DNA from: Selaginella moellendorffii
Lineage: Eukaryota; Plantae; Lycopodiophyta
DNA length: 64,000 nucleotides
Assembly (NCBI RefSeq): GCF_000143415.4
Contig: NW_003314360.1
Span: 550,595 to 614,594, forward strand
Reading direction: 5' to 3'
The position numbers and the translations under genes were made by a program. The notes beneath the pieces are model-generated. The model was not told where the DNA came from. It was given only the letters and a program-made list of their open reading frames with translations, and made no database searches. This document shows, piece after piece, positions 8,700 through 16,685 of the stretch. How positions within the stretch are numbered: the stretch's first letter is position 1; each line of letters begins with the position of its first letter.

Positions 8700-10463
8700 A
8701 TGTCGACGTTGTCCACAGTTGCACGTACTGCGCAGCTGCTCCGGAATGCGTCGAGTGTGTCAGAAGTGAAGCGCATTGCCGACATGGCGCAGAGCGGCGA
8801 CAATGCGTGGTCGGAGGAGAGTCGAACCTACCTGGCCAACCTCGCCGTCCACATGCACGCCAAGCTGGGAAGCACAGAGGATGCCGCGCAGGCATTTGCC
8901 GGAATCAGGCAGCCCAATGTCTTCTCCTGCAACATGATGCTCGCAGCATACGCCCGCAATGGCCAAGTTGAGCCCGCGCGGCAAATGTACGAGTGGATGC
9001 ATGAGAGAGGTGTTGCGCGGCTGAGGCCGGACGTGGTGTCCGGCTCCTGCCTGGTGCGTGCTGCTGCCCAGGCCGGGGATGTGGAGCAAGCCAAGCGCTT
9101 GTTTGACTCGTTGCCTGCTTGGGACATGGTCACCTGGAACGTCCTGCTTGCTGCATATGGCGACTGCGGCCACTGCAGCGACGCCAAGCTCCTCTTTGAC
9201 ACCATGCCCAGCCGCGACATTGTGTCGTGGACCACCCTCCTCCATGCTTTTGCCCAGCACGGGGACCTGGCGACAGCGCAGGCCCTGTTCGATGCCATGC
9301 CCGCGCGGAACCTCGTGTCGTGGAACACCTTGCTCCAGGCGGTGGTGGCGGCAACACTTGACGAAGATGATTGCGAGGAGCGAGATCGTGGTGGTGCTGC
9401 ACTGGTAGCAGCACAGCGCCTGTTCGACGCCATGCCTGCCATGGACGCAGTGTCCAGCACGGCCCTTATCTCGGCCTATGGCTCTGTAGGCGACCTGGCA
9501 AGCGCACGAGCTGTGTTCGATGCCATGCCCGTGTTGCACCGGGACGTGGTCTCCTGGAATGCCATCATTTCCGCGTATGCCCGCATTCACGACCTTCCCA
9601 CCGCCCGCCGTCTTTTTTATTCCATGCCACACCGCGACACTGCGTCTCACAACGCGATGGTGATGGCATATGCCGCAACCGGGCATGTGGAGGAGGCCAA
9701 GAACATGTTTGATACCGCTCCGCTTGTGAACATGGTATCATGGAACTCCATGCTGCAAACGTATGCAACGCACTTGGACCTCACGGACGTTCTCTCCCTC
9801 TTTAAACGCCTCCCCGACCGCGACATTGTGTCGTGGACCATACTGGTTGCAGCAATTGCCCGAAGTGGGGATATGCAGTGCTCGCAGGGCGTCGTGTTTA
9901 GCGCCATGCCCGCCCGAGCACTCGTGTCGTGGAACGCGTTGCTGGCGGGGTATGCGCAGGCGGGGCGCGTGGAGCGCGTGAATGCATTGTTTGCCACTTT
10001 GCCCGAAGCCGACGTTGTCACCTGGAGCGTGGCCATGGCCGCCAACGCAAACTCCCCAGACCACACTGGCGACTCGTGCCGGCTGCTGCACACCATGGCG
10101 TGCCACGGCCTGCAACCCAACGCTTGCAGCTTCCTGGCCCTCCTCACAGCCTACTCCAACCTCGCGCTCCTCCGCCCCGCCTGGAGGCTTTTCCTGTCCA
10201 TGGTGGCCGACTTCCGCGCCCCGGCGGCGAGGGAGCACTACTGCGCCATGGTGGCGCTCCTGGCGCGGGCGGGGCGGCTTGACCAGGCGGAAGAGTTGAT
10301 GGAGAGCATGCCGTTCGTGCCCGACGCGTCCGGGTGGGGCGCCCTGGTGTGGAGCTACAGGGCGGAGGCGAGGCGTGGCGCCGGTGGAGCAACGAAGGCT
10401 TTGCTGCTTGGCGAGGAGGCCGAAGCGCTGGCCCTCGCCTCGCAAATGCTGGCGCCGTGCTAG
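8700..10463 (+). CDS. PLS-class PPR protein (no DYW)
   Basis: Tandem MP.RD.VSW repeats, EHYCAMVALLARAG...MPFVPD. Confidence 0.9.
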   Translation: MSTLSTVARTAQLLRNASSVSEVKRIADMAQSGDNAWSEESRTYLANLAVHMHAKLGSTEDAAQAFAGIRQPNVFSCNMMLAAYARNGQVEPARQMYEWMHERGVARLRPDVVSGSCLVRAAAQAGDVEQAKRLFDSLPAWDMVTWNVLLAAYGDCGHCSDAKLLFDTMPSRDIVSWTTLLHAFAQHGDLATAQALFDAMPARNLVSWNTLLQAVVAATLDEDDCEERDRGGAALVAAQRLFDAMPAMDAVSSTALISAYGSVGDLASARAVFDAMPVLHRDVVSWNAIISAYARIHDLPTARRLFYSMPHRDTASHNAMVMAYAATGHVEEAKNMFDTAPLVNMVSWNSMLQTYATHLDLTDVLSLFKRLPDRDIVSWTILVAAIARSGDMQCSQGVVFSAMPARALVSWNALLAGYAQAGRVERVNALFATLPEADVVTWSVAMAANANSPDHTGDSCRLLHTMACHGLQPNACSFLALLTAYSNLALLRPAWRLFLSMVADFRAPAAREHYCAMVALLARAGRLDQAEELMESMPFVPDASGWGALVWSYRAEARRGAGGATKALLLGEEAEALALASQMLAPC

Positions 10464-10676
10464 AAATGACTGACTGACGGAGCGCCGTTAGGGTTTCCAG
10501 GCGGGAAGGGAAAGGGTTGGGCGACCTTGGCCCAGGGCGGCATTGGGTAGGGCGGCATCGCCATCGGCATTGTTGCCATCGTCAAGGGCTGTCGTGCGCA
10601 TCGCATCGCATCGCATCAGGTGCTTGTTGCTTGACCGAGCTTGGTTGCGAATCGGGATGCCCTGACTCTCTCCGAG

Positions 10677-13145
10677 ATGTGCATTCTGTGTGTGGCGTCG
10701 AGGTGGTCACGGCGCATCGTCACTATGCTGCCGTGGCTCATCTTCCCGCTCGTGCTGGTGTGGACGCTCTCGCAGCTCCTGCCACCCGGGCTGAGGTTCG
10801 AGATCACGTCCCCCCGGCTGGCGTGCGTGGGCGTGCTGCTGCTCAGCCTCGCCTGGTACGAGTTCTTCATGCCCCGGCTGTCCGAGTGGCGCACCCGCCG
10901 GAGCCTGGTGCTCCACGAGAAGAGGAAGATCGAGGCGCAGGAGGCGGCCAAGTGGAGGAAGGAGGCGGTGCGAAAGTGTAGGAACTGCTTCATGGCCTAC
11001 AAGGACCAGAAGCCACAGCTGGGCGGCAAGTTCATGTGTACCTTCTGCGGTCACCTCTCCAAGCGCCCCGCTCTCGACGTCCCCGCGGGGGGCATGCCCG
11101 TCAACCGCTACATTGGCAGCGGCAGGAAGGAGTTGAGGATGCAAGGGAGGCGGAGCTGGAGCCAGGACGTATGGCCCGGCGTGTGGATGTCCGCCAGCGA
11201 CAAGTGTGTCATCGGCGCCCAGACCTCGGGGCTGCTCATCGTCTTCCGCCTCGTCTCCTTCGTCGGCTACTGCCTGTGGTGGGCGCTTTCCAGGCTGTGG
11301 AGTGGGGGGATTATGTCCGACGCGGACAGCTCCCGGACGGACAGGAAAGCCGGGCACCGGAAAGGCGACGATGGGAGTGGCCAGGAGAGCAAAGTTGACA
11401 AGGTGAGGCGCAAGGCGGAAGAGAAGCGGCTGGCTAGGCTAGAGAAGGAACAGATGGAGGCCGAGGAGAGAATGCAACGGGAGGAAGTAGCCAGGCTTGT
11501 AGACGAGCGCAGAAGGCAGAGGGCCGATGCTCAGAAAGACAACAAGATGGCTGACGAGGTCGGGAGTAGTGACGAGCGGGCCCAACGTCGGAAGCAGGAG
11601 AAAGCCGGTGGCGACAGAGGCAAAGACTCGTGGAAGTCAAGGAGCGGGGCTGTTGCTCTCGAGGATCCAAGAAAGGCCATGGACAAGAACAAGAGAGACA
11701 AGAGGCCCGATGCTGCCAGGCCCGTCGTCGTCGTCGAGCCTGGGCTGGCCAAGACTGAGACGATCAAAGCAGCAAGCAACGTGAAGTCATCCGTGGCCGT
11801 AGCCAAGCCGGTTGTTGTTTGCCCGGTCACGAAGCAGCAGTTGATGAAAGTCAAGGCGTCGGTGTTGAAAAAGCAGGACAAGCATGTTGTGTCCACGACG
11901 GCAATAGCTGGTACCACCTCGTCAAGCAAAGCGAACGCAAATGAAGGAGTGGCGCGTAAGCCATCCGCGTGGAACCGGATCTCTTGGGCGTGGGGTAAAG
12001 GAAGTGGCACAAGGATGACCAAGCACCACCAGAGTATCAGTGAGGTTCGTAACTTGTTCTTCACTCCGTTGCTTTCAAGTGACACGGGTAATCGTTGTCT
12101 GCTCAGGTCCAAGGCTTGGATGCTTCAACTAGCACATCTCCTGACGTCGACGGCGTCCCGCCATCGCCATCACCATCACCTGCTCTAGTTGAGGCTGATC
12201 TGCAAGCGCTTCACGACAGCGCCTCCTTGGCTAGTCCCCGCGCGTGCAAGAACGAAACCGCCGGCCTGTCACCAGTCGACGATTGCCCTCCTCCTCCTTC
12301 CCCGTCCCAGTCCGTCTACTCGACGTTCATGGCCAGTGTTCCAGATGCACAACCGGCTTTTGACGGATGGGTGGCTAGTGACTTGGCTCCCAAGTCGACG
12401 TGGAAAATGTGGGAGGCACCCAACCTCGATCTTCCGAGGCTTACTCAGTGCATCAACGGCGTGGGTCCAGTGTCGTCCCAGCCCAGCGGTGACCTGGCAT
12501 CGTCATTCCTAACCAGCGGCCCGGTCGGCATCGTCCCGAGCGTCCCCATCACCAATAACCTGTGGTCCAACTATCATGCATTCGAGTCTGCAAGACGGAT
12601 ATGGGAGGATGACTTGCAGTCGGAGGTGACTCCGCCCGAGTTTGTGGATTGTATCACGCAAGAGGTTATGAAGGACCCAGTTATTGCGGCCGATGGGCAT
12701 TCTTACGAGCGCTCAGCGATCGAAGCGTGGCTCAAGTAAGTCTTGTTCTTTCTTTGTTGGTGCTGTACTAACGCTCCAAAGGGACGTCTTCTTTTGGTCG
12801 CCAGGACGCATGATACATCCCCCAAGACGGGAGAAGTGTTACCTTCTCTAGGCAGCAGCGGCGGCGGAGTTGATAAGTCATTGCGGCCGAACCACAACCT
12901 GAGGGGCCAAATCATCGAGTACAAAGAATGCATGCAACGAGGGTATGGTGCATTGTTTTGGTGATCTCAACTTGGCTTATTCGTGTCCTCCACCCAGGTT
13001 AGTGCCTGCCGCCAGTGGTGCTGCCGGGTGGCAGCAGCCGGCCGCCACAGAAGCGGTGAGAAAGGGTCATGTTGGGGGCCTCTACACACCTCCTCCTGGG
13101 CTGGGATCAGTGTGGGCATATAGCAGCACCACCAATATCTCCTAG
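10677..13145 (+). CDS. NST1-like (At3g51640/50-type) membrane/zinc-finger/coiled-coil protein with C-terminal U-box; exons 10677-12044, 12107-12735, 12805-12942, 12998-13145
   Basis: N-terminus [33 protein letters not shown]...FMCTFCGH; U-box [41 protein letters not shown]...LRPNHNLR; GT-AG introns keep the frame. Confidence 0.82.
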
Positions 13146-13247
13146 CCTGCTTTGGCCTGGCCTGGCCTGGCCGTAAACTCTTCTACCTAATAAGCTAAGT
13201 CTTTGTTTCCTCGTCTCTCCTTTGCTAGGCCTAGGTTGTGTCATGCC

Positions 13248-14938
13248 ATGCGGCTGCTTGGCTTCCTCGCGTCTGTTGCTGCTGCTGCGTCGTTCGGCCG
13301 AGGGCGAGGGCGAGGGCGATGGCAAGGAGGGGAATGTGGCTTGTATGTGCACGCCAGCACCCCGTCGCCCACGACCTGTTGGAGCCGGGGGATCAGCGTG
13401 CTCAACTACATCGTCCCCAAGAAGAAGAAAGGCGTCAGGCCTCGCTTCTGCCTCACGCGGCTCAAGAAGAGGAGGATCATCGGCAACCTGGTGAAGCGGT
13501 CCAAGAGGCATACATGGACGAGCAAGAGGAGGCTGGCGATGGAAGTGGATGCCGTCAAACAGGTGGAGGAGGAGGAGAAGAGGAGGAGGAGGGCCGTAGA
13601 GGACAGGCCCCTGCTGCTGCAGCTGAGAAGGCAGCAGCAGAGGGCGGGCCGGGTGCGGAGGATTCTGGGCGAGCAAAGGACCTTTGCAGACAAGGCCGCC
13701 GACGTGTATGCCGAGCTCATTCGCCTGAGAGCAGCAGGCAAGCCGTTGTCCCAGCTGAGCTACGACGGCATTGACAGGTGGTTCAAGAGTGACACCGCTG
13801 CTTTCGCGGGCCAGAGGAGTGCGGAACCCGGCAGGGCACAAGTTGCGTCGGCACTGGAATCCAACGGGAGCGTGTTTCATGGCCTGGGGTGGCTGGGCAG
13901 GGGAAGGTGGAACGTTCACACCACGACGATAGACGATGCTGGAGTGTGCCGGAGGTGTCACGAGCAGCTGTCCACGTACAAGACCGACGCACAAGAGGCG
14001 GACAAGTTCGCCCGTCACATGGTGAACCTCGCCTCCAAGAGCGTCCATCGCTTGCATTTCGACATGTTCTCGGTGAGCCAGCTTCCTCTCCCCACCCCTG
14101 TCTGTGAGTGACGACGCTCTTTTCCAAAGGATTGGATGCACCTCACCTCGTACGACGCCATCCTGGACGGTCTAAGCTTGCGACGCTGCAACGTTGACTC
14201 GCGCCTCAAGCTCGTCAGGAGCGCAACCTTCCACGACATTGTGCGTTACGTTACAGAAAGAGTGTCGCTCCTGCTGCTCACTGGCCCATGTCTGCCTTGC
14301 AGTTGAAATCAGCGGTGGAGGAGCTGCGAATGCGGTCCCTCAAGTTCTTGGTTGTGCTCGACACCGAGGGAGCTCATGCGAACGGGAACTCACCGGTGGC
14401 TGGGGATCCCAAGCTGTTTCTGTACCAGCTGAAACAAGACAAGGAGCTCTACACGGTGCCCAAGGGAGTGGACTCGACCTGGTAGTGGTACCTTCCAGCC
14501 TTTTATTTCAGTGGTTGTTATGTTCTTTGCTCCCCAAGGCTTGCCCTCTATGCTGCCATGAAGCACGGATGCATGCTGCTCACCAACGACACCCTGGAGA
14601 AGCCGAGAAAGCTATACCCAGGCATGTTCTTACCCAAGTGGATGGAGAGGCATCAGGTTTGTCTTTCATTCATGTTGAGTTTTTATCGTCTGCTTCATTT
14701 GCGCTTGCAGGTTCGTTTTGATCTTCCAATTCAGTTGTCATGGCCGCCAGCTTATTCGGTGGCGATCCAGGTTGGTTTGCCTGCAATTGTTTCATTTCAC
14801 CGCCATTTATCCGAGTCTGCTTTTTTCTTCCAGGAGTCTCTGGAGGGCTCGTGGCATGTTCCCAGCTACAGCGCTCATGATCTGACACAACCTAGGCCGT
14901 GGCTATGCATCACGCGGCCAAGAAAGCTGGTCTACTAA
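13248..14938 (+). CDS. PRORP-like (protein-only RNase P) paralogue, degenerate active site, PPR arm missing; exons 13248-14072, 14130-14240, 14303-14481, 14539-14656, 14711-14770, 14834-14938
   Basis: WFKS, FHGLGWLGRGRWNV, GVCRRCHEQL, YDAILDG, LYAA...LLTND, PKWMERHQV, PPAYSVAIQES..GSWHVP, WLC. Confidence 0.88.
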
Positions 14939-14996
14939 AATAACACAACGCGGACTCTCGCTTATGTGGTAACCATCTCCTAACCTTTGAAGCTAG

Positions 14997-16685
14997 ATGC
15001 TTGACAGGGCCAGCGAAGACAAGCTTGCTGTTGCGATTGCATCGTGCGTCCAAGTTGACACGCTGAAGCAAGTGCACTTGCGTATCTGCCAGGAGTTCCC
15101 TCGGACCCCTTACCTGTTGAACTTGGTCGTGCAAATGTACGCTAAGCTGGGCGATCTGGAGTCCGCGTACCAGACTTTTACATGTATCAAAGAGCCCAAC
15201 CTTTACTCCTGGAGCCTCATGTTAGCCGCATACACTCAGCACGGACAGATGCAGCAAGCAAGGCACCTGTTCGACAAAATGCCCGAGAGAAATGTCGTCG
15301 TGTGGACATCCATGATAACAGGATACTCTCAAGCCGGGAATGTTGAGGAGGCCCGGTGCATTTTCGACGTGATGCCTGAGAGGAATATCGTGTCTTGGAG
15401 TGCCATGCTGCAGGGATACGCCCAAAATGGGCACGTTGACGAAGCTAAAGACGTGTTTGACAGAATGCCTAGGGTGAACGTCGTGTCTTGGACTGCCATG
15501 GTTCAGACTTATGCTGAGAACGGGCATCTTGTAAAGGCCAAGGTAATGTTTGACCAAATGCCCGAGCGAAATCTCATAACCTGGACTGTGATGCTTTTGG
15601 CATATGCCAATGGTGGGCTTGTGCATGAGGCAAGGGTGACGCTGGAGAGGATGCCCGAGTTCTCGTTTCTCTCTTGGAACATCATGCTTTCGGCGTATGC
15701 ACAGCAAGGTGATCACAACAATGCAACGCGTACGTTTGATGCTATGCGAGAGAGGACTGTGACCAGCTGGAACGCTCTCATTTTCTCGTGTGCTCAGAAT
15801 GAGTCCATCAAGCAGGCCGAACACCTCTTCGAAACGATGCCCGAGAGAAGCCTGGTGTCTTGGACCTCAATGATTTCGGCATACGTAAGTGTTGGTTGCT
15901 TGGAGGGATCGAAGTGCGTCTTTGACCGTATGCCGGAGCGGGATATAGTCGCTTACAACACCATCCTGCAGGCGTATGTCCAGTCGGGGCATTTGGACTA
16001 TGCAGAGACATTGTGTGAGAAAATGGCGAGGCACGACGTTGTAACGTGGACAACTATGATGGTAGGCTACGTCAAAGACATGAACCTGTGTGCGTGCAAG
16101 GCTATGTTCTACCTCCTGCCAGACCGCAACTGCATGTCGTGGAACGCTGTTCTTGCAGCCATTGCCCAGAACGGGCATCTGGTAGCTGCGAGGCAAATGT
16201 TTCAAGAGATGCCAGAGCGTAACATTGCCTCCTGGAACACTATGATCGCCGCCTCCTCGCATGCTGGACAACCCGCCGCAGCAGTAATGCTCTTCCACTT
16301 TCTCCAAGCGGAAGGCCTTGCTCCTTCGGACATATCATTCACGAGCCTCTTGCATGCCACAAGCCACGGGGGTGACTTGTCCGAAGGCTTGCTATACTTC
16401 AGGTCGATGGTTGCTGATTATGGTCAATCGCCTCTGAGAGATCACTTTTGTAACGTGGTCGACATCCTTGGACGAGCCGGCTACACTCAAGAAGCCGAGG
16501 AACTTGTTAACTGCATGCCATTCCTTCCGAAAGAGGTGGAATGGGGAGCCTTGCTGGGTGCCTGTAGGATCCACATTGATGTCACCCCTGCCGCTCGAGC
16601 AGCCGAGCATATTCTCGAGCTGGATCCAGACCACGGCTCCGCGCGTCTCTTGCTGGAAAGCATCTACGCCGGTCTGCGAGATTAA
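14997..16685 (+). CDS. PLS-class PPR protein with E motifs (no DYW)
   Basis: MPERN.VSW repeats; HFCNVVDILGRAG, WGALLGACRIH, AAEHILELDP. Confidence 0.92.
   Translation: MLDRASEDKLAVAIASCVQVDTLKQVHLRICQEFPRTPYLLNLVVQMYAKLGDLESAYQTFTCIKEPNLYSWSLMLAAYTQHGQMQQARHLFDKMPERNVVVWTSMITGYSQAGNVEEARCIFDVMPERNIVSWSAMLQGYAQNGHVDEAKDVFDRMPRVNVVSWTAMVQTYAENGHLVKAKVMFDQMPERNLITWTVMLLAYANGGLVHEARVTLERMPEFSFLSWNIMLSAYAQQGDHNNATRTFDAMRERTVTSWNALIFSCAQNESIKQAEHLFETMPERSLVSWTSMISAYVSVGCLEGSKCVFDRMPERDIVAYNTILQAYVQSGHLDYAETLCEKMARHDVVTWTTMMVGYVKDMNLCACKAMFYLLPDRNCMSWNAVLAAIAQNGHLVAARQMFQEMPERNIASWNTMIAASSHAGQPAAAVMLFHFLQAEGLAPSDISFTSLLHATSHGGDLSEGLLYFRSMVADYGQSPLRDHFCNVVDILGRAGYTQEAEELVNCMPFLPKEVEWGALLGACRIHIDVTPAARAAEHILELDPDHGSARLLLESIYAGLRD

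What the first reader, a model, noticed from the sequence alone, without database searches (positions are those of the whole stretch)
13248..14938. PRORP pseudo-enzyme: PPR arm replaced and catalytic aspartates lost, zinc site and gene structure intact
Seen: six clean exons with no stops. The four zinc ligands are retained (CRRC, WHVP, WLC). The NYN active-site segment TPQGSNDDWYWLYAA of AtPRORP1 (recalled) reads VPKGVDSTWLALYAA, so the DD pair becomes ST. DGAN becomes DGLS and TNDEMRDH becomes TNDTLEKP. The N-terminal PPR repeats that bind the tRNA elbow are replaced by an Arg/Lys-rich helical segment behind a mitochondrial-presequence-like start (MRLLGFLAS...). Known: these Asp residues are needed for cleavage, and S. 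moellendorffii mitochondria are reported to encode no tRNAs. Inference: an organellar RNase P freed from tRNA processing and repurposed as a non-catalytic RNA-binding or scaffold protein.
Basis: partly seen in the sequence, partly recalled or inferred. Interest (0 to 1): 0.82.

Follow-up and report, generated by a model that had tools for sequence, protein, structure and literature searches.

The report
Expressed PRORP paralog with eroded active site
Selaginella moellendorffii expresses a fast-evolving duplicate of its protein-only RNase P gene that keeps the zinc-binding scaffold and nuclease fold but has lost the tRNA-binding PPR arm and two of the four essential catalytic aspartates, so it is probably no longer an RNase P and may be a natural "dead" PRORP.

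Summary
Window 13248-14938 (+) is a six-exon, GT-AG gene encoding 465 aa. It equals RefSeq LOC112342118, annotated "proteinaceous RNase P 1-like" in S. moellendorffii. Spliced RNA contigs from four studies remove all five introns exactly as modelled.

Residues 150-460 align to AtPRORP1 (E 5e-50), and the predicted fold matches 4g23 (E 1e-26).
- All four zinc ligands are kept.
- D399 and D493 equivalents are kept; D474/D475 read S370/T371, and D497/H498 are lost.
- Every other full-length PRORP I aligned keeps these residues, apart from one with N at 474.
- Residues 1-150 have no detectable PPR similarity. They are very basic (pI 11.8) and mostly predicted disordered.

A canonical PRORP (LOC9655352, 985 aa, active site intact) sits on another scaffold. 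All five introns of the window gene share its codons and phases, so this is a DNA-level duplicate. Its tree branch is about seven times the median, yet the frame stayed open (0/300 in neutral simulations).

Best reading: a selectively maintained, probably non-RNase-P derivative, either an RNA binder or adaptor or an altered nuclease. Mitochondrial targeting, the link to mitochondrial tRNA loss and complete catalytic death remain unproven.

The parts
13248..14938 (+). Whole coding region of the PRORP-derived gene (LOC112342118 isoform X1, 465 aa, P0002). Exons: 13248-14072, 14130-14240, 14303-14481, 14539-14656, 14711-14770, 14834-14938.
   Evidence: Spliced translation is identical to P0002. 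All five introns are removed at GT..AG in RNA contigs of four runs.
13248..13694 (+). N-terminal 149 codons: a hydrophobic start (MRLLGFLASVAAAASF), GRGRGRGR, then a Lys/Arg-rich segment (pI 11.8, 39 K+R in residues 1-150) in place of the PPR array.
   Evidence: No Pfam PPR hit. hhalign against a canonical PRORP profile gives probability 0.2%. AF2 pLDDT is <50 for 18-37 and 57-116, with a long helix at 108-141. Composition. No relatives in the Atlas or in the exhaustive search, other than one weak colinear match.
13695..14072 (+). Last PPR-like helices plus the first half of the zinc-binding central domain (residues 150-275). Includes the CxxC ligands C234 (13947-13949) and C237 (13956-13958).
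   Evidence: phmmer to 4g23_A, residues 150-274 against chain 191-313, E 6e-19. Highly conserved columns kept: 5/5 in the last PPR and 23/26 in the central domain.
14166..14168 (+). Asp288, equivalent to AtPRORP1 D399 (retained metal ligand, DGLS motif).
14471..14479 (+). Asp369-Ser370-Thr371 (GAC TCG ACC) at the positions of AtPRORP1 N473-D474-D475. Both essential Asp are replaced.
   Evidence: Alignments. Codons. No RNA/DNA difference at these positions in four runs (table 3).
14588..14605 (+). Asp389 (equivalent to D493, retained) followed by T-L-E-K-P where canonical PRORPs have E-M-R-D-H. D497 and H498 are lost.
14855..14908 (+). Second half of the zinc site: His439 (14855-14857, WHVP) and Cys456 (14906-14908, WLC).

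Best explanation
The locus is a DNA-level duplicate of the S. moellendorffii PRORP gene. It has diverged extremely fast but has been kept as an expressed, correctly spliced, open gene.

The product keeps the PRORP zinc-binding central domain and the NYN/PIN-like fold. The active-site pocket is eroded: D474 and D475 have become S and T, D497/H498 are lost, and A401, N402, H438 and R441 are changed. The PPR array that docks the tRNA elbow is gone, replaced by a highly basic, largely disordered N-terminal segment.

It therefore most likely no longer works as RNase P. Shown: homology, fold, residue changes, expression, shared intron positions, and the existence of an intact canonical paralog.

Inferred: it acts as a non-catalytic, or at most weakly and differently catalytic, RNA-binding or adaptor protein. 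In that reading the basic tail gives unspecific RNA affinity. The dead NYN groove or the zinc domain would hold an RNA or a partner, for example an active NYN nuclease, as PRORP1 pairs with MNU2 in Arabidopsis. Its compartment is unknown.
For: - Gene model and identity to P0002.
- Homology to AtPRORP1 at E 4.7e-50 over residues 150-460, and Pfam PF16953 at 83.6 bits against a cutoff of 39.1.
- AF2 pLDDT of 83-97 in most 10-residue blocks of ~140-465 (dips to 66-77 around residues 291-310, 331-350 and 441-450), and a Foldseek match to 4g23 at E 1.2e-26, rmsd 2.6 A over 323 columns.
- In 283 aligned relatives, P0002 is the only full-length protein lacking both D474 and D475.
- Columns >=95% conserved that P0002 keeps: central/Zn domain 23/26, NYN 24/46. 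The canonical Sm PRORP keeps 42/46 in the NYN domain.
- The PPR domain is undetectable.
- Spliced contigs in four studies match the model.
- The canonical paralog P0293 has DGAN, GSNDDW and SNDEMRDH intact.
- Its five C-terminal introns sit at the same codons and phases as the five introns of the window gene.
- P0002 lies inside a starred clade of non-seed-plant PRORPs, with an end branch of 1.93 against a median of 0.28. Sister placement to the Sm canonical gene is not rejected (AU p 0.19).
- Neutral decay to the observed identity never leaves the ORF open (0/300).
- Literature: each of the four Asp->Ala mutants and the PPR deletion (delta245) gives kobs <0.001/min (PMC5039416).
Against: - No ortholog was found in any other species, in 5.8 billion 90% clusters and 1.84 billion representatives. 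There is therefore no dN/dS and no evidence of long-term conservation.
- D399 and D493 are retained. D474A and D475A are rescued by high metal in vitro (PMC4919922). Asp369 and Glu392 lie beside the lost ligands, so a remodelled metal site is not excluded.
- No binding, localisation or partner data exist.
- Contig depth suggests only modest expression, and contigs cannot quantify it.
Confidence: 0.6

Rival explanations
1. It is still a metallonuclease, but with a rebuilt metal site (D288, D389, plus D369 and/or E392) and a new substrate chosen by the basic N-terminal segment rather than by a PPR/tRNA-elbow contact. That would make it a neofunctionalised endonuclease, not a dead one.
For: The two Asp whose mutants cannot be rescued by metal (D399, D493) are the ones retained, while D474A and D475A are metal-rescuable (PMC4919922). 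In non-RNase-P NYN proteins position 474 is often Ala (PMC5039416). Acidic residues flank the lost positions. The fold is confidently predicted, and the ORF is under selection.
Against: D475 is conserved across NYN nucleases generally and is Thr here (PMC5039416). D497/H498 and several other pocket residues (N402, H438, R441) are also changed. Asp at position 473 also occurs in 13 canonical sequences that keep DD, so D369 need not be compensatory.
Confidence: 0.22
2. It is a lineage-specific duplicate on its way out: transcribed and still open, but no longer doing anything useful (relaxed selection, an expressed near-pseudogene).
For: The branch is very long at 1.93. Half of the conserved NYN columns are lost. 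No orthologs were detected elsewhere. The N-terminus is built partly of trinucleotide-repeat-like low complexity (GRGRGR, EEEEKRRRR). One allele has its stop codon changed (14936 T>G in run X10).
Against: In neutral simulations from the canonical CDS, 0 of 300 runs kept an open frame even at 60% identity. All ten splice sites are intact and used. The zinc ligands and 23/26 conserved central-domain columns are kept, whereas the erosion is concentrated in the catalytic pocket and the PPR arm. The only coding SNP seen between runs is synonymous (T89 ACA>ACG).
Confidence: 0.13
3. It works as a split enzyme or complex. The PPR protein encoded 59 bp downstream (14997-16685), or another PPR protein, would supply RNA recognition in trans to the PPR-less NYN protein.
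For: The downstream gene is immediately adjacent on the same strand, and RNA contigs run across both genes. The downstream ORF is a 562-aa PPR protein.
Against: The neighbour is a PLS-type PPR with an E-like tail, unlike the P-type PRORP array. PPR genes are very abundant in this genome, and another lies at 8700-10463. A contig across two close genes does not show one transcript. The reading frames differ, so read-through cannot fuse them. The active-site problem remains.
Confidence: 0.05

Closest known systems
Plant single-polypeptide PRORP (AtPRORP1-3, PpPPR_63/67/104; Pfam PF16953; PDB 4g23, 5diz)
   Same: Homologous central zinc domain (CxxC...H...C) and NYN fold. 31-38% identity over ~315 residues. 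It falls inside the non-seed land-plant PRORP clade. All five introns share codon and phase with the canonical S. moellendorffii PRORP gene. D399 and D493 equivalents are kept.
   Different: There is no PPR array. D474/D475 have become S/T and D497/H498 are lost, as are about half of the otherwise invariant NYN columns. The N-terminus is basic and disordered. The branch is about seven times longer than typical.
Canonical S. moellendorffii PRORP, LOC9655352 / SELMODRAFT_80247 (P0293, 985 aa; locus L001)
   Same: Same genome and the same C-terminal exon-intron layout. Sister placement is not rejected (AU p 0.19).
   Different: The canonical copy has intact PPR_long and active-site motifs and a branch length of 0.64. 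Identity to the window protein is only 36%. It lies on a different scaffold.
Non-catalytic PIN/NYN domains used as partners (for example the SMG5 PIN domain pairing with SMG6, PMC12923823) and the PRORP1-MNU2 NYN-NYN complex in Arabidopsis (Bouchoucha 2019, cited in PMC10226603)
   Same: A PIN-like fold is retained without the full set of acidic ligands. There is precedent for NYN proteins working in pairs.
   Different: There is no sequence relationship beyond the superfamily, and no evidence here of any partner.
Human PRORP (MRPP3)
   Same: A PRORP that on its own is nearly inactive and depends on partner proteins. Foldseek matches 7onu_E at E 8e-15.
   Different: MRPP3 keeps all catalytic Asp and its PPR domain, and the 2024 review explicitly calls it 'not a defective pseudo-PRORP' (PMC10941002).

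Membership tests
PRORP (eukaryotic protein-only RNase P, PF16953) | PRORP-type NYN metallonuclease domain, by sequence and fold | tested here: met
   PF16953 at 83.6 bits against a cutoff of 39.1, residues 228-456. phmmer to 4g23_A at E 4.7e-50. Foldseek to 4g23 at E 1.2e-26, rmsd 2.6 A.
PRORP (eukaryotic protein-only RNase P, PF16953) | Four strictly conserved catalytic Asp (AtPRORP1 D399, D474, D475, D493) | tested here: not met
   D288 and D389 are kept; S370 and T371 replace D474/D475. All other full-length relatives in a 283-sequence census keep them, apart from one with N at 474. Their essential role is documented in PMC5039416.
PRORP (eukaryotic protein-only RNase P, PF16953) | Split zinc-binding central domain (C344, C347, H548, C565) | tested here: met
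   C234, C237, H439 and C456 align to the four ligands. 23/26 conserved central-domain columns are kept. Zinc binding itself was not measured.
PRORP (eukaryotic protein-only RNase P, PF16953) | N-terminal PPR domain (about five PPR motifs) that binds the tRNA elbow | tested here: not met
   No PPR or PPR_long hit at E<=0.1. hhalign of residues 1-160 against the canonical profile gives probability 0.2%. AF2 shows disorder plus single helices. Only the last PPR-like helices (residues 150-180) remain.
PRORP (eukaryotic protein-only RNase P, PF16953) | Descent from the land-plant PRORP gene lineage | tested here: met
   It lies inside a clade with 96/95 support together with bryophyte, lycophyte and fern PRORPs. 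All five introns share codon and phase with the canonical Sm gene.
PRORP (eukaryotic protein-only RNase P, PF16953) | Pre-tRNA 5'-leader cleavage activity | not testable with these tools
   Needs an in vitro cleavage assay.
Organellar (mitochondrial) protein | N-terminal amphipathic presequence, or experimental localisation | tested here: inconclusive
   The first 30 residues are Arg-rich with one acidic residue. However, the helical hydrophobic moment of residues 1-18 is only 0.04-0.19 per residue. No predictor or experiment was available. The protein scores much higher against organellar AtPRORP1 than nuclear AtPRORP2 (E 5e-50 against 2e-35).

The most novel reading that the evidence does not exclude
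This is a natural 'dead PRORP'. One organellar RNase P copy lost its substrate when Selaginella mitochondria lost every tRNA gene. It was then kept by selection as a non-catalytic RNA-binding or adaptor protein, with the zinc scaffold and NYN groove retained and the PPR arm swapped for a basic tail. That would show how a protein-only RNase P is recycled once tRNA processing disappears from a compartment.
Probability: 0.3. Interest if true: 0.75.

Novelty: new variant of a known kind. Interest (0 to 1): 0.55.

Why it matters
Reviews describe the four PRORP active-site Asp as strictly conserved in all sequences. The library searches turned up no description of a degenerate PRORP paralog.

Selaginella is the plant in which mitochondria have no tRNA genes and plastids import many tRNAs. 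The fate of organellar tRNA-processing enzymes there is therefore a real open question.

An expressed PRORP derivative with a selectively eroded catalytic pocket gives a concrete, testable handle on that question and on what the zinc/NYN scaffold can do without catalysis. The practical point is that the RefSeq name 'proteinaceous RNase P 1-like' should not be read as an active RNase P.

Tried and rejected
- **Alternative splicing or RNA-level change restoring DD or adding PPR exons.** Contigs of four runs show only the modelled junctions and no base differences at codons 369-371. The upstream U-box gene ends about 100 nt before the ATG, so there is no room for extra 5' exons.
- **N-terminus as a collapsed PPR remnant.** MAFFT and one BLAST hit (Mesotaenium P0060) align it colinearly with PPR motifs, but profile comparison gives probability 0.2%. 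This is not supported, though not excluded.
- **Orthologs for dN/dS.** The word search and the exhaustive representative search found nothing closer than 38% identity, so no selection test was possible. Allelic variation is too sparse: one synonymous SNP and one stop-codon SNP.
- **Read-through fusion with the downstream PPR ORF in the stop-lost allele.** The frames differ, and the extension ends after 10-11 codons.
- **Other copies and look-alikes.** There is no second PRORP-like copy in the window. Atlas look-alikes for residues 1-150 gave nothing usable.

Full report
**Observation**

Reading window 12800-15400 and splicing by eye gave six exons: 13248-14072, 14130-14240, 14303-14481, 14539-14656, 14711-14770 and 14834-14938. 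All have GT-AG borders. The CDS is 1398 nt and encodes 465 aa without an internal stop.

The product is letter-for-letter P0002. NCBI names it [quoted passage not shown] (LOC112342118). P0001 is a 417-aa isoform X3 with a frameshifted tail.

All quoted motifs are present.

**Expression and splicing**

Logan contigs of four runs from four studies hold the gene with all five introns removed at exactly the modelled GT..AG junctions. Those runs are therefore RNA. No alternative junction and no base difference appears at codons 369-371.

Sixteen runs from several studies hold at least half of the sampled words. The only coding difference between runs is synonymous (13514 A>G, Thr89). One run carries 14936 T>G, changing TAA to GAA, plus a 12-nt deletion. 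That would add 10-11 residues to the C-terminus.

The upstream U-box gene ends near 13146-13150, so no extra 5' exons can be hidden there.

**Homology and fold**

Residues 150-460 align to AtPRORP1 (4g23_A) at E 4.7e-50 and to AtPRORP2 at E 1.8e-35. Pfam PF16953 scores 83.6 bits against a cutoff of 39.1.

An AlphaFold2 model built with a 42-sequence alignment has pLDDT of 83-97 in most 10-residue blocks of ~140-465, dipping to 66-77 around residues 291-310, 331-350 and 441-450. It matches 4g23 at E 1.2e-26, rmsd 2.6 A over 323 columns.

**Active site**

Positions were checked directly against AtPRORP1 (P0302):

| AtPRORP1 | Role | P0002 |
|---|---|---|
| C344, C347, H548, C565 | zinc ligands | C234, C237, H439, C456 (all kept) |
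| D399 | catalytic Asp | D288 (kept) |
| N473 | adjacent to the DD pair | D369 |
| D474 | catalytic Asp | S370 (codon TCG) |
| D475 | catalytic Asp | T371 (codon ACC) |
| D493 | catalytic Asp | D389 (kept) |
| D497, H498 | D497: outer-sphere contact to metal 2 | lost (TNDTLEKP) |

P0002 is the only full-length sequence lacking both D474 and D475; a few fragments and one Drosera protein (N at 474) deviate singly. Asp at position 473 also occurs in 13 canonical sequences that keep DD, so D369 need not be compensatory.

The literature bears on this in both directions:
[quoted passage not shown] Deleting the PPR region (delta245) does the same and raises KD to 24 uM (PMC5039416).
- D474A and D475A are rescued by high metal concentration, whereas D399A and D493A are not. 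D497 makes an outer-sphere contact to metal 2 (PMC4919922).

So two of four essential Asp plus D497/H498 are gone, and the two retained are the non-rescuable ones.

**Pattern of erosion**

I took alignment columns at least 95% conserved among 32 canonical land-plant PRORPs and counted how many are kept:

| Region (AtPRORP1 numbering) | Kept in P0002 | Kept in canonical Sm PRORP |
|---|---|---|
| Last PPR helices (262-292) | 5/5 | 5/5 |
| Central/Zn domain | 23/26 | 24/26 |
| NYN domain | 24/46 | 42/46 |
| PPR region 1-261 | 5/22 | 21/22 |

The changed NYN positions cluster around the pocket: A401, N402, H438, R441, S472, D474, D475, W478 and M495-H498. The scaffold is conserved, while the catalytic pocket and the substrate-docking arm are not.

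**N-terminus**

Residues 1-150 give no PPR hit in Pfam. They score probability 0.2% against a canonical PRORP profile and have no usable look-alike in the Atlas.

The segment has pI 11.8 with 39 Lys+Arg. It is predicted as helix 2-16, helix 41-55, a disordered stretch 57-116 and a long helix 108-141.

A weak colinear alignment to PPR motifs is not significant. Whether the segment is a collapsed PPR remnant or new sequence stays open.

The first 18 residues are hydrophobic with a very low helical hydrophobic moment. The "mitochondrial presequence" reading is therefore a guess, and the KKKK/KRR clusters could serve nuclear or nucleolar targeting.

**Origin**

S. moellendorffii has a canonical PRORP (P0293, LOC9655352, 985 aa; the older model is SELMODRAFT_80247). 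It sits on a different scaffold and has its PPR_long domain, DGAN, GSNDDWYWLYAA and SNDEMRDH intact. It is 36% identical to P0002.

Mapping its exons shows that its five C-terminal introns fall at the same codons and phases as all five introns of the window gene: S|D, x|L, Trp split TG|G, Q|V and Q|E. This is a DNA-level duplication, not a retrocopy.

In an IQ-TREE analysis (LG+C20, 36 rows, 314 columns), P0002 lies inside a 96/95-supported clade of bryophyte, lycophyte and fern PRORPs that includes the Sm canonical copy. Its end branch is 1.93, against a median of 0.28 and 0.64 for the Sm canonical copy. Its exact place is unsure because of that long branch. AU tests do not reject it as sister to the Sm canonical gene (p 0.19) or a lycophyte clade (p 0.15).

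**Selection**

No ortholog exists in the collections searched. The best hits are canonical PRORPs at 38% identity or less, from Diphasiastrum, Psilotum, Riccia and others. dN/dS therefore cannot be computed.

As a substitute, I mutated the canonical Sm coding sequence at random until protein identity fell to 60% or 37%. This left 0 of 300 open frames, with a mean of 8-11 stop codons.

The frame is open, all ten splice sites are intact and used, and the central domain is conserved. This indicates that most of the divergence happened under selection for a protein product.

**Interpretation**

The most likely reading (about 0.6) is a maintained, PRORP-derived protein that no longer acts as RNase P and serves as an RNA-binding or adaptor protein.

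The rivals are:
- a remodelled but active nuclease (about 0.22);
- a decaying duplicate (about 0.13);
- a trans-complemented split enzyme using a neighbouring PPR protein (about 0.05).

The mtDNA of S. moellendorffii lacks any tRNA gene (PMC5654404), and Selaginella plastids import many tRNAs (PMC11573648). The causal link and the compartment are untested.

**Novelty**

The gene is annotated, but as an RNase P-like enzyme. Library searches for PRORP with Selaginella, for protein-only RNase P, and for pseudo- or inactive-paralog terms found no description of a degenerate PRORP. The 2024 review uses "pseudo-PRORP" only to say that human PRORP is not one.

I did not test it and it did not change my reading.

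Noticed in passing
window 14997-16685 (+): An intronless 562-aa PLS-type PPR gene starts 59 bp after the stop of the PRORP-like gene on the same strand. RNA contigs run across both genes. Many contigs from paralogous PPR genes attach here with loose ends and odd joints (15293-16180).
   Followed up: partly
window 8700-10463 (+): A second intronless PPR ORF (587 aa) lies two genes upstream. PPR genes are therefore locally dense around the locus.
   Followed up: no
window 10641-13146 (+): The upstream gene has a C-terminal U-box-like segment ([31 protein letters not shown]). Its introns 12736-12804 and 12942-12996 are confirmed by RNA contigs, and its contig depth is about six times that of the PRORP-like gene. 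It ends within about 100 nt of the PRORP-like ATG.
   Followed up: partly
window 13150-13175: A (CCTGG/GGCCT)n microsatellite lies in the short intergenic spacer. One run has a 5-nt insertion (TGGCC after 13152) and a T>C change at 13151.
   Followed up: no
window 14936 and 14954: In run X10 the stop codon TAA reads GAA and 12 nt are missing downstream, which would extend the protein by 10-11 residues (ENNTTR.VTIS). This is an allelic or strain variant of the C-terminus.
   Followed up: partly
window 13557-13597: A purine-rich GAG/GAA/AGG trinucleotide-like repeat encodes EEEEKRRRR inside exon 1. Read laying skipped it as a repeat, so the N-terminal segment is partly built of low-complexity repeats.
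   Followed up: no
P0036, P0038, P0271, P0312 and relatives (not in the window): A subset of canonical PRORPs, including those of the ferns Ceratopteris and Adiantum, has Asp instead of Asn at AtPRORP1 position 473 (GSDDDW). P0002 groups weakly with these in the tree.
   Followed up: partly
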